Counted from the first letter of the stretch, positions 24,932 to 50,429 are shown. The stretch: DNA of 64,000 nt from IMGVR_UViG_3300043446_004437:152025-216024, one strand, 5' to 3'. Numbers and translations: made by a program. The notes: generated from the letters alone by a model not told the origin.

Positions 24932-27088
24932 TTACTTTAGCCAAACGTCAGAAGAAGTAGCTTCACGAGTTGGGGTAAACACTCCATTTTTCCACTCTCC
25001 ATACTGTTCTCCAAGTTTTACTTCTTCGTTTACCCAAGCTTCTATTTTTGTTTTGTTAGAATGTTCTTGATCGGTAAACTTATACCACGCAGTTGAATCT
25101 TTTGGAACCGTTTGAAGTATCCAAGATTTCAAATTATCTGCGTCTCCACCATATTTAATATATACACTTTTTGCTTTTTGAAAATCAACACTAGTCATCC
25201 AACTATTTTTAAAAAAATTTTCTCCCCACGCAAAGAAAACACAACTAAGCCTACTTGGACCAGAAACAACTTCTTTAGTATAATTTGTTTGATTTAATTT
25301 ACTTCTCAACATTCTTACCTGATTTATTGGTATCCACATTTCATCTGCGGCCCCGGCATAAAATTCTGCGTGACCTTCTGATCTGGACCTAGAATCAATT
25401 AAATTAAGTATTTGTTCTCCAGAAAGATTTGTTAATTCAGATTTGTCAGCCAAAACTAGTTGCCACATTTTTACAGTAGTTGAAAATGGATATGCTAAAT
25501 CTATTTTCAAATCTCTACTCCATGATTCTTTAGTGCCAATTTGAAATAAGCCAACAAAAGAATCGTTGTTAACCACTCTTGGTCTCCAACTTGATTCTCT
25601 AAATGAGATTGCAGTAAAAACTGCGGCCATTTCTGCGGAAAAATTGCCAGCTTCTTTAAGAAGAACAAAAACTTCCATATCTGACATTGTGCTGTAATCA
25701 GTAAAAACTTTAGTAAGAATTGCAGTATTAATTGAAACTCCAAATTTATCTGGTTTTATAGAACTTGAGTTTCCTGGGTTAGATATAACATCTTTACTGC
25801 CCACCACCAATGAGAGTCCACCATCTTTGGCAACATACTTACCGCCCCTTTGCGGAGAAAAACTCATATGTATGTGATCAGCATGATGGTTGTTGTCTAG
25901 TATGATTTTAACGTATTTTAAATTTTGATATAAACTAGAAACTTTATTCATTGTGCCGTTGTTTTTCCCGTTTGCATACTCTTGACCAACAAAACTATTT
26001 ACAATTATAACGTCTGGCAGAATGTGCTGGGGAGCTACATTTAGTTTTTCTAATAAATTATCTAAATGTTTTTTATAGGTTTCTACTCCAGACGAAATTG
26101 GTCTTAAACTTTCATCCGATTTTGATATAGATGTAAAATCAAAAGCTCTACCAAATGCGTGGTCAGTAACGCTTCCGCCTGATACAAGCTCATTTAAATT
26201 AGCTGCTTGATCAGATTGGCTTGATGCCCTAAATGCTCCAAGGCCACCTATTACTTTTAAAGAACCGCCAACGTTTCCGGCTAAAAACAAAAGACATTCT
26301 ATTAACGCTGCTGAAACAAAAGCTTTTTGTGGTTTAGCGGTGATAATATCTTCTGGTATTTGTTGAATTTTCCCAGAGTTTTCTAAGCCTGGAAAAATTG
26401 TTGTTGAATTATATGTTAAATTTAACAAGCTATCTTGTATATCAAACTGGAAACCTTGTGTTAAAACATCAGAATCATTTATATATGCAGATGTTTTTAG
26501 TATACTTCCTCTTTCTATATACCATTTTATTTCTTGTTCGTTTAAATTAGAAGCCAATGCTATCGGCATATAGCCGGCACTAACTGCTTCCGAAGAGGAC
26601 TGTCCATTGTCCGGTGAATGGCCGCTACCATCCCCAGATTGTTGATATTTATTTATTAACAGATTTGCAAAATCCGCTATAACTCCATCGTTATATTTTC
26701 TACCTAAACTACTACCAGCTATTATTGAAAGAGCAGCATCTTGCCCTTTTTTAATAATTGGGTTACCATCAGCGTCAACTTCATTGGGAGAAGGTATTTG
26801 TAGGTCTGCATTTTCTGAACCTAAAATAGAACTACTTAAACTTGAAAGGCTTTCTCTCGCCATACTAATTCTATATAAATTACCATATACACCACTTGCC
26901 AAAAGATCTTTTCCACTCGCAGCAGAAATTAAATCTGAAGAAGATAACGTTTGTCCAGCATATCCTCTTGCTGCAGTCGTTGTTGCCAAAATATTTTTGC
27001 CATTTTTTGGCACTATATTATCTGCTATTGCATTAGATAGGGTTTCAGAATTTTGTAAATTTTCAATTGAAATATCAAAATAAGACAT
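24932..27088 (-). CDS. tail-associated peptidoglycan hydrolase: M15-like peptidase plus SLT-like transglycosylase (718 aa)
   Basis: DHAFGRAFD and HADHIH (M15 zinc ligands); AISFRESSWRP and GLFQIG (lysozyme-like SLT). Confidence 0.75.
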   Translation of the reverse strand: MSYFDISIENLQNSETLSNAIADNIVPKNGKNILATTTAARGYAGQTLSSSDLISAASGKDLLASGVYGNLYRISMARESLSSLSSSILGSENADLQIPSPNEVDADGNPIIKKGQDAALSIIAGSSLGRKYNDGVIADFANLLINKYQQSGDGSGHSPDNGQSSSEAVSAGYMPIALASNLNEQEIKWYIERGSILKTSAYINDSDVLTQGFQFDIQDSLLNLTYNSTTIFPGLENSGKIQQIPEDIITAKPQKAFVSAALIECLLFLAGNVGGSLKVIGGLGAFRASSQSDQAANLNELVSGGSVTDHAFGRAFDFTSISKSDESLRPISSGVETYKKHLDNLLEKLNVAPQHILPDVIIVNSFVGQEYANGKNNGTMNKVSSLYQNLKYVKIILDNNHHADHIHMSFSPQRGGKYVAKDGGLSLVVGSKDVISNPGNSSSIKPDKFGVSINTAILTKVFTDYSTMSDMEVFVLLKEAGNFSAEMAAVFTAISFRESSWRPRVVNNDSFVGLFQIGTKESWSRDLKIDLAYPFSTTVKMWQLVLADKSELTNLSGEQILNLIDSRSRSEGHAEFYAGAADEMWIPINQVRMLRSKLNQTNYTKEVVSGPSRLSCVFFAWGENFFKNSWMTSVDFQKAKSVYIKYGGDADNLKSWILQTVPKDSTAWYKFTDQEHSNKTKIEAWVNEEVKLGEQYGEWKNGVFTPTREATSSDVWLK

Positions 27089-27089
27089 G

Positions 27090-49800: not shown

Positions 49801-50429
49801 TTTAACTTTTTCCTTTCACCATCTTTACCAAACAATGGATCGGTGACCATCCTTTGTGCTCCCCATAAAGCTGGGAGCTCGTAAGGCATCCTTCTGCCTA
49901 CTCTAACTATTCTTTGTTGAATATCCTCTTTAAGACCCCATATACCTGCCGGCTCTGAAGTTAGCCCTCTACCAGCTTGATTCAATTCACCTTTTGTAAA
50001 TGAATAGCCATAATTTTCATAAACGGAATGTCTTGAACCAAGATAACCAGTTGTTAGTTCATCATTAATTTCAAAAACTAATTTTTCGTATGGATCATTA
50101 ACGCCATCAATTGCTCGTTTAACGCCCTGCAAATTGTCTAGATGTCTTCTAACATCTATCATATCTTTAATTAAAGAAGTATTACCAGATTCCTCTAATT
50201 TTTGTGCTAACTTTAATCCACCTTTTCGCAGCATGGCTGCGCCAACACCTGCAACCAGCATCGTTGTTCCTGCGTGCGCAAAAAAACGCATAACAGGATG
50301 GCCATTTAAGGCTCTAGCAACTGCACCACTATCTTGAGATATGCCTTCTGTTTCACCTTCATTCAAAGGTATATCGCGAGAAGTTACACCATTACCTATG
50401 CTGTGTAATGGTCCGCGATCTCTAATCAA
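43848..50429 (-). CDS. tape measure protein (2193 aa)
   Basis: Very long, A/G/L/K-rich helical protein with hydrophobic segments, directly after two chaperone genes; TTG start with SD AGGAG. Confidence 0.75.
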   Translation of the reverse strand: MIRDRGPLHSIGNGVTSRDIPLNEGETEGISQDSGAVARALNGHPVMRFFAHAGTTMLVAGVGAAMLRKGGLKLAQKLEESGNTSLIKDMIDVRRHLDNLQGVKRAIDGVNDPYEKLVFEINDELTTGYLGSRHSVYENYGYSFTKGELNQAGRGLTSEPAGIWGLKEDIQQRIVRVGRRMPYELPALWGAQRMVTDPLFGKDGERKKLNWYNPADVVSDFVKTSVSTMATMILPFEAGGAALNASKSSLNTFKYSMSSIGDLSPIKQKVAKGFVDLNELLSEVGHDLATAGNAFLKKTAQSSGALNAATTAMGANEQPRILDALHKARKGARAAYEASRASADPGMKRATHYAKALAFGARGVDGEIGPGLIDTIPALRGLNAGIRAGAQQFRVYGEAYDALQNSIQQARVLSSSSPRSADIISAMQKIQAQYSSRLSKFANQISILGAGGPDDASFTRSDFYLGQQQKEYKELLSKRLISKGLDKKQTEDLVSQMRVVMPGGKTHPTNMISIGKMKIHADEDQYFDILLERLKNVKGGKDYETALANLAGPGKTSDEFLKDAIEETNTYFTSKEFQHGVKLKIKNQWNSFYRNDLSDIGSSILKPQKAVYQDFVGPLNSAKKQFLQRKTAQVLGIPLKDLEGRMVSEDVIRNGLSNRGFDPNDFTNLKSFLIRNKKITSGIFEGNFNLFGMRPLLISEAIDRGKFAHLPDREQQIIKNLAGRMAIDDPVSKSIGFNKLEGVYQTKSGQVLDFSSIKTSFKNVGNFLASDLHIPIIKLNPTDLFAYRSFAEIAQKGPIQYSPGFTVQPFGEVGKTRADFHIWHATKGTKGKVTSYSINEFSGQTYGKTLSGTYRPLPTRSAEMLTKHARFASGLSGESAFDIDGKSGSRFLNFVLGNSDRARGFKNAMDIEADQPNSLFGLLSRFRKRSYDINNPSVISKLLSGEQVLVNEGGVKKAVTLNKVGDKYNLVDADGAISGVFNESEILKSSDVFRKRTFGYGFTDKIMRELEEAAPEIFTRTGLTRVSEIRTPQQAREAAAQLESMKPVLSAKAREAGVDPRFLEESYSRIRNIVRESDLLAASQSSSKSSTITTRLDELKNEIFRYVSQANAVIGQGGSSTESMFVNIQNVLTNLKKSLPASKYAEAQAAALSTLFNISAYTTYNQSLSSEQNARAALNALLGLTRSTSAAGTATRSFLEPFARGTESLINTGVKRPFNATLPFLRRKFGTASFKPSEYSVDPLGSGQGITFVPTFGTVFDKNPFGAIKSALGIGTYKNPQDYSTASTAVSQGVERLNRYFGTLGMQLDVSKFNGPLDLYMRGMVGKRVLPIFAAGTAAFTIDRTIGGYTQPKDQNGERVYSPFFTTKAAAGVVEARSILSGITPGGPSYEDKKDQLTEGLVPIRQGRFWPLGNTPFKGGKVQYYRPSWYRKLQAGAMFTSDTYGSPMEKFLYYNDISPLRPLDPYRFENKHYYDRPYPVTGEYFTGPFGPAVPLLNATLGKILKPQTLMHQQELNQGLQNYVPAGNFGAYNATPYLSASGGTGTGVGAGIGVGRGVSGLAVSGVAKTNQQYQSAGSTPLYTAGNTTRQTIAGLNQPLMQMAYGPTKQRGIMPEQLVPTGAPLSPGSIRMQSGSLGYTTQEMAGIYGFGFSSLREKFGFGQSDFQPNKATLQSASKAYGVTRAFWDLNLGGAGDIPLPAQGALGNLEFSEIVRRFIPKERSGVDYLNPIQNTMGQQYPFLPGAEYFTDFTRGDPFTQVAEGELRLPGKGYERLNVLNSDATGRYGLVDQLSILADVAPYSNQFKKLNNSIDSKNLSPDQKIKVQEIRERVAQTTKKYEFSRYQYKDKTASELGISDRRYQFERTKEYLAHRDTIFNTKFWQNRTAQEDWERRNVYGATFPQWQRPFESFVKPMVQKATQRDPITAAGSLLAIGTAFGRTPKGKAFGGFFGAATGLTASTFENVRERVTGERFIPKTRKKELALEEYSDILNYVKYSRLSSMAQQSGNAFEANQYRQAAKRTMYGADIYGAPVETLSLAIPKRKREHFLEMINAPESERKAILSTSGRLERRIYEAAWGMPVEDKPDLAEYFSRHELPDLNWEGWHPNTNLDHVKVKIGQSMGLEMSQMGYYPQQIKEANLANPSFPEFRKKENKEDTLNKLRNLLRGSGVSGTITPVANTFGSSSIDIFAGVR

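What the first reader, a model, noticed from the sequence alone, without database searches (positions are those of the whole stretch)
24932..50429. Co-translated entry module: tape measure, RNAP, basic protein, hub with nuclease, dual wall hydrolase
Seen: these genes follow one another with overlaps or gaps of 1-9 nt (apart from the frame break inside the RNAP) and no obvious terminator. Inference: tail-tip and tail-lumen proteins together could breach the wall (M15, SLT), span the membrane (hydrophobic segments in TMP, RNAP and hub), deliver a transcription enzyme and deliver a nuclease. I do not know of this combination described for a contractile-tail phage, but cannot rule out prior description.
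Basis: inference. Interest (0 to 1): 0.7.

Follow-up and report, generated by a model that had tools for sequence, protein, structure and literature searches.

The report
Tail-module RNA polymerase in jumbo phage
A 216-kb contractile-tailed phage from fresh water carries, in the slot where its relatives keep the tail tape-measure gene, a split protein whose predicted fold is that of a two-barrel RNA polymerase; this suggests, but does not prove, that the tail delivers its own transcription enzyme, something shown so far only for one long-tailed Thermus phage.

Summary
Six minus-strand ORFs at 24932-50429 are separated by 9, -4, 37, 9, 9 and 1 nt, with no intergenic terminator.

The window is the last 64 kb of a 216-kb uncultured freshwater myovirus. 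Its tail module is syntenic with Bacillus phage 0305phi8-36.

- **"RNAP" (660 + 938 aa):** supported at fold level. Relatives encode it as one protein of about 1600 aa. A confident AF2 model (pLDDT 87) has long matches only to QDE-1, plant RDRs and phage P23-45 gp64. No sequence method detects it, and the catalytic loop is an invariant DxDD, not DxDxD.
- **Frame break:** real. It is a 20-nt imperfect duplication in the linker between the barrels, and an independent metagenome holds it too. The halves are predicted to reassemble.
- **"TMP" (2193 aa):** a homologue of 0305phi8-36 gp145, a virion protein. It is not a homologue of gp146, that phage's annotated tape measure. The RNAP-like gene sits in the gp146 slot.
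- **Hub:** a gp147 (gp27-like) homologue. The SNase-like motif has only weak support.
- **M15 + SLT hydrolase:** catalytic residues are invariant, but Pfam scores are below threshold.

The four-gene cassette was conserved in all eight related contigs inspected. Ejection and enzyme activity are inferred. Closest precedent: the TMP-fused vRNAP of siphovirus P23-45.

The parts
50439..51578 (-). Two paralogous small genes (167 aa at 51075-51578, 209 aa at 50439-51068): a tail-assembly chaperone-like pair, in the position of 0305phi8-36 gp143/gp144
   Evidence: Both hit phrog_29362. Their position matches the two-gene chaperonin of 0305phi8-36.
43848..50429 (-). 2193-aa basic protein (pI 9.5, TTG start): homologue of 0305phi8-36 gp145, a virion structural protein.
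   Evidence: BLASTP against gp145 gives 5e-53 over residues 1197-2172, with no similarity to gp146. tblastn hits only 0305phi8-36-like phages. There are no Pfam or PHROG hits.
41869..43851 (-). N-terminal half (660 aa) of the RNAP-like protein: N-terminal domain, the predicted first beta-barrel (DPBB-B-like, with conserved R, K, K) and a helical connector
   Evidence: Fused in relatives. A3 profile hit of 584 bits. Model and fold matches. Conserved R438, K447 and K479 in P0002 numbering.
41832..41900 (-). Frame break: an imperfect 20-nt tandem duplication in the linker between the barrels. The upstream ORF stops at TGA 41869-41871, and the downstream frame is open from about 41884, with its first ATG at 41831.
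   Evidence: An independent contig has no gap here.
39015..41831 (-). C-terminal half (938 aa) of the RNAP-like protein: the second barrel with the acidic loop, a helical region, then a hydrophobic helix and a highly conserved C-terminal domain
   Evidence: A3 profile hit of 411 bits.
41736..41759 (-). Invariant GGFDLDDK loop (residues 25-32 of the 938-aa ORF; D28, D30, D31): the putative metal-binding site, non-canonical DxDD
   Evidence: Invariant in 66 sequences that are 18-72% identical to the reference. In the predicted complex it contacts the invariant Arg of the N-terminal half.
39297..39350 (-). Hydrophobic helix (residues about 828-845 of the 938-aa ORF), upstream of the conserved GPPLLPGGSAYE...YP.R C-terminal domain
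   Evidence: Sequence; conservation.
38553..39005 (-). 150-aa basic protein (pI 9.85) of unknown function, always found between the RNAP-like gene and the hub
   Evidence: Proteins of 143-155 aa sit at this position in all eight related contigs inspected.
27090..38543 (-). 3817-aa baseplate hub protein. Residues 457-1953 (window 32685-37175) are homologous to the 0305phi8-36 gp147 gp27-like hub. Gly/Ala-rich hydrophobic segments lie at residues 1858-1876 and 3200-3255.
   Evidence: phrog_20474 at 2e-132. tblastn against gp147 and relatives. 358 homologues, none with a Pfam domain. Hydropathy.
28278..28361 (-). SNase-like motif in the hub (residues 3395-3422: DGDT...V...RLDGINVSE)
   Evidence: Motif and conservation. 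hhalign against the phage's own SNase gives probability 68.8% over 39 columns. No Pfam SNase hit in 20 family members. A weak ESM-Atlas lead.
24932..27088 (-). 718-aa protein with two putative peptidoglycan hydrolase sites. The LAS/M15-like site is H310..D317 plus H402/H405/H407 (window 26138-26161 and 25868-25885). The SLT-like site is E498-S with GLFQ (window 25535-25636).
   Evidence: Invariant residues in 15 homologues. Pfam SLT scores 14.4 bits here and appears in 7 of 15 members (best 2e-4); M15_4 appears in 1 of 15 (0.0022). Own-genome SLT hit at this site.
21101..24922 (-). Downstream baseplate genes in the same tight array: 122 aa, 214 aa, 140 aa (weak gp25/sheath-initiator match), 388 aa (Baseplate_J) and 415 aa
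51649..58197 (-). Upstream tail genes: sheath paralogue (638 aa), 256 aa, sheath (426 aa), tube and tube paralogue (233 and 254 aa), and 310 aa. The order is the same as 0305phi8-36 gp137-gp142.

Best explanation
The block is the inner-tail and baseplate-hub part of the late tail operon of an uncultured freshwater jumbo myovirus. Its tail module descends from the same stock as Bacillus phage 0305phi8-36. Gene order is: chaperone pair, gp145-like giant protein, RNAP-like protein, a 150-aa basic protein, a giant gp27-like hub, and a two-site wall hydrolase.

The gene in the slot where 0305phi8-36 has its putative tape measure encodes a single-subunit two-barrel polymerase of the QDE-1/RDR/crAss gp66/P23-45 kind. 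It belongs to a previously unnamed family of 181 clusters at 50% identity, all about 1500-2000 aa. A C-terminal hydrophobic helix and a conserved tail-end domain follow the polymerase part.

Proposed mechanism (inferred by analogy with P23-45 gp96, crAss gp66 and N4 vRNAP):
1. The protein is built into the virion with the tail-lumen and hub proteins.
2. It leaves through the tail at infection, after the hub-associated hydrolases open the wall.
3. It stays near the entry pore through its C-terminal part.
4. It transcribes the first genes of the incoming DNA independently of the host polymerase.

In this particular lineage the gene is split between the two barrels into 660-aa and 938-aa ORFs. 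These most likely reassemble as two subunits. Less likely, they are joined by a +1 frameshift at GUU-UGA.

Shown: gene order, synteny, homologies, fold, invariant residues, and that the break is real. Inferred: virion location, ejection, RNA synthesis, and the role in early transcription.
For: Fold:
- The AF2 model of the fused 87%-identical homologue, built with a 66-sequence alignment, has pLDDT 86.8 and pTM 0.86.
- In AFDB clusters, 13 of the top 30 hits are named RNA-dependent RNA polymerase, with probability up to 1.00.
- In Swiss-Prot AFDB the top hit is RDR4 at probability 0.94, starting exactly at the predicted first barrel.
- BFVD gives weak hits to crAss-like giant proteins.

Active-site-like conservation: across 66 sequences the invariant residues are K221, K224, R225, R233, D362, K447, D698, D700, D701, R725, P727, E732 and D998.

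Context:
- Synteny with 0305phi8-36, in which gp145, gp146 and gp147 are virion proteins by mass spectrometry.
- The cassette is conserved in all eight related contigs inspected.

Split:
- An independent contig shows no gap at the break, and most substitutions fall at third codon positions.
- The halves are predicted to bind: score 0.63 against a best control of 0.00. That mark was reached by 58 of 80 solved complexes and 2 of 110 mismatched pairs. Runs agree in at least 66% of contacts and partner pLDDT is at least 55.

Precedent: P23-45 gp96 is a TMP-fused vRNAP (PMC10770324).

No other RNAP-like gene is detectable in the genome.
Against: - There is no sequence-level link to any RNAP family (Pfam, PHROG, PDB profiles).
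- The acidic loop is DxDD, and the R-Q-P motif lies downstream of it. The canonical form is [RK]xP upstream of DxDxD.
- No virion proteomics exists for this clade, and no cultured phage carries the gene.
- A folded 1150-residue polymerase cannot sit in a tail tube, so it would have to be stored elsewhere or unfolded.
- The gene that holds this position in 0305phi8-36 (gp146) is not detectably related.
Confidence: 0.5

Rival explanations
1. The protein keeps a polymerase-derived fold but is a structural inner-tail, tape-measure or plug protein with no polymerase activity. The conserved charged residues would serve assembly or DNA binding in the tail.
For: It sits in the tape-measure slot of the 0305phi8-36-type module. 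The metal motif is non-canonical DxDD and [RK]xP is misplaced. Like tape measures, it has a conserved C-terminal end and a hydrophobic helix.
Against: Sixteen residues, including three Asp in one loop and several Lys/Arg, are invariant across sequences only about 20% identical. That pattern is typical of an active site, not of a ruler protein. The model is globular rather than an extended helix.
Confidence: 0.2
2. It is an active polymerase but is not delivered by the virion. It would be a late-expressed non-virion RNAP, or an RNA-dependent polymerase used inside the cell (for example against host defence), and merely happens to be encoded in the tail operon.
For: The nearest structural neighbours are RNA-dependent RNA polymerases of RNA silencing. 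Nothing here measures virion content.
Against: The strict cassette conservation between two virion-protein homologues, in all eight related contigs inspected, points to a physical association with tail proteins. So does the tight coupling of 9 to -4 nt. A late gene product cannot serve early transcription unless it is packaged.
Confidence: 0.15
3. In this genome the gene is a pseudogene: the frame break inactivates it.
For: There is a stop after residue 660 and a 20-nt out-of-frame duplication. Other contigs also show breaks in this gene.
Against: Both halves are intact long ORFs. A strain 95% identical keeps the same arrangement, with substitutions mostly at third codon positions. The break lies in the variable linker between the barrels. 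The halves are predicted to reassemble. All other giant genes of the genome are intact.
Confidence: 0.1

Closest known systems
Thermus phage P23-45 gp96, tape-measure-fused virion RNA polymerase (Chaban et al. 2024, PMC10770324)
   Same: Both are single-subunit two-barrel polymerases encoded in the tape-measure position of the tail module, followed by a membrane-type segment. The proposed role is transcription of the first genes at the entry pore. The paralogue gp64 (PDB 8f72) is among the long structural matches.
   Different: P23-45 is a siphovirus; this phage has a sheath. gp96 has canonical DFDGD and is 5002 aa with a long tape-measure part and a metallopeptidase. Here the motif is DxDD, the protein is about 1600 aa with only about 460 aa after the polymerase, and the wall hydrolases are separate genes. 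No sequence similarity was detected. No second (non-virion) RNAP was found in this genome.
QDE-1 and eukaryotic RDR RNA-dependent RNA polymerases, and crAss-like phage phi14:2 gp66 virion RNAP
   Same: These are the best structural neighbours. The domain order matches: the barrel with basic residues, then a connector, then the barrel with the acidic loop.
   Different: Those enzymes have DxDGD or DFDxD. gp66 is a capsid-packaged cargo protein of a podovirus. TM-scores here are only 0.15-0.25.
Bacillus phage 0305phi8-36 tail module (gp137-gp151; Hardies et al. 2007, PMC2147016)
   Same: The order is the same: sheath paralogue, sheath, tube, tube paralogue, two chaperonins, gp145-like giant, a second giant, gp27-like hub, then gpV/gpW/gpJ-like genes. 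gp145 and gp147 homology is significant. Both phages encode a DnaE-type polymerase.
   Different: The second giant (gp146, 'hypothetical tape measure') is unrelated to the RNAP-like protein and contains no DxDD or DxDxD motif. The 150-aa basic protein and the separate M15+SLT protein have no counterpart there. In gp147 the hydrolase domains are fused to the hub.
N4 virion RNA polymerase
   Same: It is a giant virion protein ejected to transcribe early genes.
   Different: N4 vRNAP is a T7-like right-hand polymerase, which is a different fold. No T7-type RNAP domain is found here (though that search's control did not ring).

Membership tests
Two-barrel (double-psi beta-barrel) RNA polymerase superfamily | Two DPBB domains forming the catalytic core, in the overall fold of QDE-1/RDR/gp66/gp64 | tested here: met
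Two-barrel (double-psi beta-barrel) RNA polymerase superfamily | DxDxD metal-binding motif in DPBB-A, preceded by [RK]xP 20-100 residues upstream (the filter used in PMC10770324) | tested here: not met
   The invariant loop is G-G-F-D-L-D-D-K (DxDD). R-Q-P lies 25 residues downstream of it. No DxDGD occurs in any ORF of the genome.
Two-barrel (double-psi beta-barrel) RNA polymerase superfamily | Conserved basic residues (Lys/Arg) in the other barrel (DPBB-B) | tested here: inconclusive
   R438, K447 and K479 are invariant or nearly so, and lie in the predicted first beta-rich domain at 435-492. I could not superpose residues on a solved enzyme.
Two-barrel (double-psi beta-barrel) RNA polymerase superfamily | Detectable sequence or profile similarity to a curated RNAP family | tested here: not met
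   Pfam, PHROG and PDB profile searches gave no RNAP hit.
Two-barrel (double-psi beta-barrel) RNA polymerase superfamily | Template-dependent RNA synthesis | not testable with these tools
   This needs biochemistry.
Virion / tape-measure-associated RNAP (P23-45 gp96 type) | Encoded in the tape-measure position of the tail module | tested here: met
   By synteny with 0305phi8-36 gp146. Conserved in all eight related contigs inspected.
Virion / tape-measure-associated RNAP (P23-45 gp96 type) | Present in virions and ejected | not testable with these tools
   There is no cultured member. Only the flanking homologues gp145 and gp147 are proven virion proteins, and in another phage.
Tail tape measure protein (for the 2193-aa ORF) | Homology to a known tape measure, or a length that matches the tail | tested here: not met
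   It is homologous to gp145, not to gp146, the annotated TMP. There is no Pfam or PHROG TMP hit. Tail length is unknown. Only the position right after the chaperone pair fits.
gp27-like baseplate hub (0305phi8-36 gp147 family, phrog_20474) | Significant homology to gp147 and its relatives | tested here: met
   phrog_20474 at 2e-132. tblastn at 1e-17 to 7e-27 over residues 457-1953. The link from gp147 to T4 gp27 is from PMC2147016 and was not retested.
Staphylococcal nuclease (SNase, PF00565) domain in the hub | Pfam match, and the catalytic set D21, R35, D40, E43, R87 | tested here: inconclusive
   DGDT, R and E at the right spacing are conserved, with Asn at the D40 position. hhalign against the phage's own SNase gives probability 69% over the N-terminal 39 columns only. 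There is no Pfam hit in 20 members. The second half of the domain diverges in this phage.
LAS / peptidase M15 (VanY-like) in the 718-aa protein | H-x(3-6)-D and H-x-H zinc ligands; Pfam match | tested here: inconclusive
   H310, D317, H405 and H407 are invariant in 15 homologues. Pfam M15_4 appears in only 1 of 15 members at 0.0022. There is no PDB profile hit.
Lytic transglycosylase SLT (PF01464) in the 718-aa protein | Catalytic Glu-Ser and a Pfam score over the cut-off | tested here: inconclusive
   E498 is invariant. SLT scores 14.4 bits against a cut-off of 21.3. It is found in 7 of 15 members, best 2e-4.

The most novel reading that the evidence does not exclude
A widespread clade of aquatic jumbo phages with contractile tails injects, through the tail and together with the hub and lumen proteins, a previously unrecognised family of two-barrel RNA polymerase with a DxDD catalytic loop. 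In some lineages, including this one, it is split between the barrels into two subunits. It would start transcription at the repeated hairpin-type elements upstream of the small early genes at genome 50.5-55.7 kb. This would be the first tail-delivered RNAP in a myovirus, and a new branch of the two-barrel superfamily that motif-based surveys miss.
Probability: 0.35. Interest if true: 0.85.

Novelty: new variant of a known kind. Interest (0 to 1): 0.7.

Why it matters
- **Generality.** Virion-delivered RNA polymerases are known from N4-like, crAss-like, phiKZ-like and (fused to the tape measure) P23-45-like phages. A fifth, sequence-unrecognisable family in the tail module of contractile-tailed jumbo phages would show that 'bring your own polymerase through the tail' is a recurrent solution.
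- **Diversity of the superfamily.** It would extend the two-barrel superfamily to a DxDD active-site variant. Published motif filters ([RK]xP...DxDxD) exclude that variant.
- **Annotation.** It would name a family of about 180 protein clusters that currently have no annotation.
- **Evolution.** The natural split between the two barrels is a small-scale replay of the beta/beta' division of cellular RNAPs.
- **Correction.** The giant gene next to the chaperones is a gp145-type protein, not a proven tape measure.

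Tried and rejected
Sequence searches that found nothing for the RNAP-like halves:
- Pfam and PHROG gave no hit for the 2193-aa, 660-aa, 150-aa and 718-aa ORFs; the 938-aa ORF gave only a sub-threshold NitrOD5 match; the hub hit phrog_20474.
- phmmer and profile searches against PDB.
- tblastn of both halves against 50,697 phage records.
- Pfam on 16 family members.

Structure work that failed or was uninformative:
- The first AF2 model, built with only 16 sequences, was poor (pLDDT 57) and gave only noise in Foldseek. 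The deeper 66-sequence alignment fixed this.
- The ESM-Atlas fold search of the good model was noise.
- Atlas feature searches for the gp145-like C-terminal half and the hub C-terminal half gave only weak leads.

Ideas considered and rejected:
- A crAss-like podovirus (giant RNAP, low GC). Rejected because of the sheath, tube and Baseplate_J genes and the 0305phi8-36 synteny.
- Stop-codon reassignment as the cause of the break. Rejected: it is a frame change, and the other giant ORFs are uninterrupted.
- gp146 of 0305phi8-36 as a diverged homologue of the RNAP-like protein. Rejected: no profile hit and no DxDD or DxDxD motif.
- SNase or M15 domains detected by Pfam in the hub or hydrolase. The genome's clear SNase and its best M15_4 hit lie elsewhere, at C1:147252 and C1:116692.
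- A second RNAP in the genome. None found by the family profile, by Pfam Rpb1/Rpb2/T7 models or by motif.
- A Bacteroidota host, guessed from a 'Flavobacterium sp.' label on one homologue. Left open, because SD-like sequences precede many genes.

Full report
**What the sequence shows**

The window is the last 64 kb of a single 216,024-bp virus contig, which CheckV rates as 100% complete. GC content is about 33%. The source is a freshwater metagenome.

All genes of the finding lie on the minus strand:
- 2193 aa at 43848-50429, with a TTG start
- 660 aa at 41869-43851
- 938 aa at 39015-41831
- 150 aa at 38553-39005, pI 9.85
- 3817 aa at 27090-38543
- 718 aa at 24932-27088

The spacers are 9, -4, 37, 9, 9 and 1 nt. 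No terminator-like site falls in an intergenic position on the coding strand. The only strong one, at 53379..53346, follows the first tube gene. It supports co-transcription and possible translational coupling, not 'co-translation'.

**Genomic context**

Upstream lie a sheath paralogue, a sheath, two tube-like genes, a 310-aa gene and a paralogous pair of 167 and 209 aa. Downstream lie a gp25-like gene (weak match) and a Baseplate_J gene.

The only cultured relatives detectable by tblastn are Bacillus phage 0305phi8-36 and its kin. The annotated 0305phi8-36 region has the same order: sheath paralogue, sheath, tube, tube paralogue, gp142, two chaperonins, gp145 (1930 aa), gp146 (2537 aa, 'hypothetical tape measure'), gp147 hub, then gpV-like to gpJ-like genes. 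In that phage gp145 and gp146 are recorded as virion proteins by mass spectrometry; the gp147 note records only its peptidoglycan-degrading domains.

The homologies are:
- The 2193-aa ORF matches gp145 (BLASTP 5e-53) and does not match gp146.
- The 3817-aa ORF matches gp147 (phrog_20474 at 2e-132; tblastn).
- The gene in the gp146 slot, the broken 660 + 938 aa pair, has no similarity to gp146.

Hardies et al. assigned the tape measure to orf146 mainly from tail length. They noted that the chaperonins are one gene removed from it (PMC2147016).

**The broken gene is one gene in relatives**

A word-indexed search found 58 homologues. Most are single proteins of 1607-1640 aa covering both ORFs, the closest at 87% identity (P0002).

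An exhaustive profile search found 181 cluster representatives at 50% identity, almost all 1500-2000 aa and none annotated.

In a 66-sequence alignment whose members are 18-72% identical to P0002, the invariant residues are K221, K224, R225, R233, D362, G363, K447, G695, D698, D700, D701, R725, P727, E732, G947 and D998. R438, K479, D504, R631 and others are nearly invariant. This is the pattern of an active site, centred on the loop GGFDLDDK.

**Fold**

No sequence method connects the family to anything. A first AF2 model from 16 sequences was poor.

With the 66-sequence alignment, the model of residues 1-1149 reached pLDDT 86.8 and pTM 0.86. Search results were:
- **Foldseek, PDB:** no hit at E <= 0.001, but QDE-1 and Arabidopsis RDR2 recur among the top hits.
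- **AFDB clusters:** 13 of the top 30 are named RNA-dependent RNA polymerase, with probability up to 1.00.
- **Swiss-Prot AFDB:** RDR4 is first at probability 0.94, followed by RDR2, RDR5 and RDR6. The remaining hits have probability below 0.1.
- **BFVD:** three significant uncharacterised phage proteins, then weak hits to crAss-like giant proteins.

The domain order matches the single-subunit two-barrel enzymes described in PMC10770324:
- a beta-rich domain at 435-492 carrying R438, K447 and K479
- a helical connector at 505-640
- a beta-barrel at 654-738 carrying the Asp loop
- helices after that

**Departures from the canonical family**

The acidic loop is DxDD, not DxDxD. The R-Q-P motif follows the loop instead of preceding it. 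The published survey filter '[RK]xPx{20,100}DxDxD' would not retrieve this family. A defining sequence feature of the superfamily is thus tested and not met, so membership rests on fold alone.

**The frame break**

Compared with P0002 (…TGFTNVDMKGVGKNISTQLLEFRV…), the window reads as follows:
- one frame: …TGFTGVNIKHRV-stop
- the +1 frame: STGFDIKDVGESISTQLMEFRV…

This is an imperfect 20-nt tandem duplication in the variable linker between the two barrels.

Evidence that the break is real and tolerated:
- Contigs of the probable source sample are identical across it.
- A 1411-nt contig from a different study (2017) covers the site at about 95% identity without any gap. Most listed substitutions fall at third codon positions of the 938-aa ORF.
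- The other giant ORFs of the genome are intact.
- A complex prediction of residues 330-660 of the first half with residues 1-480 of the second scored 0.63 against 0.00 for the best control. That mark was reached by 58 of 80 solved complexes and 2 of 110 mismatched pairs. The runs agree in at least 66% of contacts, and partner pLDDT is at least 55. The invariant Arg of the first half contacts the residues next to D28, D30 and D31.

My conclusion is that the break is real and the gene is probably expressed as two subunits. A prfB-like +1 shift at GUU-UGA-U is possible but is speculation.

Two other lineages also show breaks. One (L024) is in the same linker. However, those contigs also have broken neighbouring giant genes, so assembly error cannot be excluded there.

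**Conservation of the cassette**

The order is: gp145-like (about 2190-2280 aa), RNAP-like, a 143-155 aa protein, then the giant hub. It was found in all eight related contigs inspected, including the most distant family members at about 20% identity. In two of those contigs the giant genes are themselves fragmented.

**Hub and hydrolase**

The hub family has 358 members and no Pfam domain. Residues 457-1953 align with gp147.

D3395, D3397, R3414, D3416, G3417 and E3422 are invariant or nearly so. hhalign against the phage's own genuine SNase (genome 147252-147506) gives probability 69% over 39 columns. No member hits Pfam SNase, and the second half of the domain is divergent in this phage. 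This remains a lead.

In the 718-aa protein, H310, D317, H405, H407 and E498 are invariant. Pfam SLT is below threshold here, at 14.4 against 21.3 bits. It appears in 7 of 15 members, and M15_4 in one. A dual hydrolase is likely but not proven.

Hydrophobic Gly/Ala-rich segments pass a Kyte-Doolittle threshold only in the hub and the hydrolase. Weaker ones are visible in the 2193-aa protein and near the C-terminus of the 938-aa ORF.

**Mechanism and comparison**

The closest precedent is P23-45 gp96. Its N-terminal 1200 residues form a two-barrel virion RNAP fused to the tape measure, and it transcribes pre-early genes, presumably at the entry pore (PMC10770324).

Here the polymerase-like protein:
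- occupies the tape-measure slot of a contractile-tail module
- is followed by a hydrophobic helix and a strongly conserved C-terminal domain
- is flanked by homologues of 0305phi8-36 gp145, a mass-spectrometry-confirmed virion protein, and of its hub gp147

The inferred mechanism is delivery through the tail and early, host-independent transcription.

No other RNAP is detectable in the genome. Seven copies of a terminator-plus-conserved-hairpin element precede small plus-strand genes at genome 50.5-55.7 kb. These are an untested candidate for the promoters such an enzyme would use.

I found no description of such a system in a myovirus, but the literature search is limited to open-access text.

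**Verdict**

I rate this a new variant of a known kind, with interest 0.7.

Noticed in passing
Outside the window: genome C1:50500-55750, + strand (the window starts at C1:152025): Seven copies of a cassette of about 60 nt. Each has a GC-rich hairpin plus a T-run, directly followed by the conserved TTTATGACTAGnGnAnAGGnCTCTAGTT (an imperfect 7-bp hairpin). Then, 15-25 nt later, comes AAGGAG and the start of a small gene. It looks like a terminator-promoter array of early genes, and is a candidate promoter for a phage-specific RNAP.
   Followed up: partly
L024:8900-9150 and L025:11850-12150: Two other lineages also have the RNAP-like gene in two ORFs. In L024 (52% identical) it is 682 + 975 aa, broken in the same inter-barrel linker but at a different sequence. 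In L025 (66% identical) it is 990 + 607 aa, broken inside a conserved region. Neighbouring giant genes are also broken on those contigs, so assembly error is possible.
   Followed up: partly
window 50427-50429 and L002:1362: The 2193-aa gene starts with TTG, nine bases after the previous stop, both here and in the 67%-identical relative.
   Followed up: no
window 59829-62072: Two adjacent paralogous genes (356 and 368 aa) with fn3 and Gly_rich_2 domains lie in a stretch of 45-53% GC, against about 33% elsewhere. The glycine-rich composition probably explains the GC jump.
   Followed up: no
window 53346-53379, minus strand: A very strong intrinsic-terminator-like hairpin (15 pairs, 7 GC, then a T-run) lies immediately after the first tube gene (233 aa) and before its paralogue. 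This would fit attenuation after the most abundant tail proteins.
   Followed up: no
window 7463-20554: Three more giant minus-strand ORFs (882, 2046 and 1436 aa) lie downstream of the baseplate genes. They are presumably baseplate or fibre proteins and were not examined.
   Followed up: no
genome C1:136257-139583 and C1:147252-147506: The phage encodes a DnaE-type DNA polymerase III alpha (PHP, NTPase, finger and HHH domains) and a stand-alone SNase (49.7 bits).
   Followed up: no
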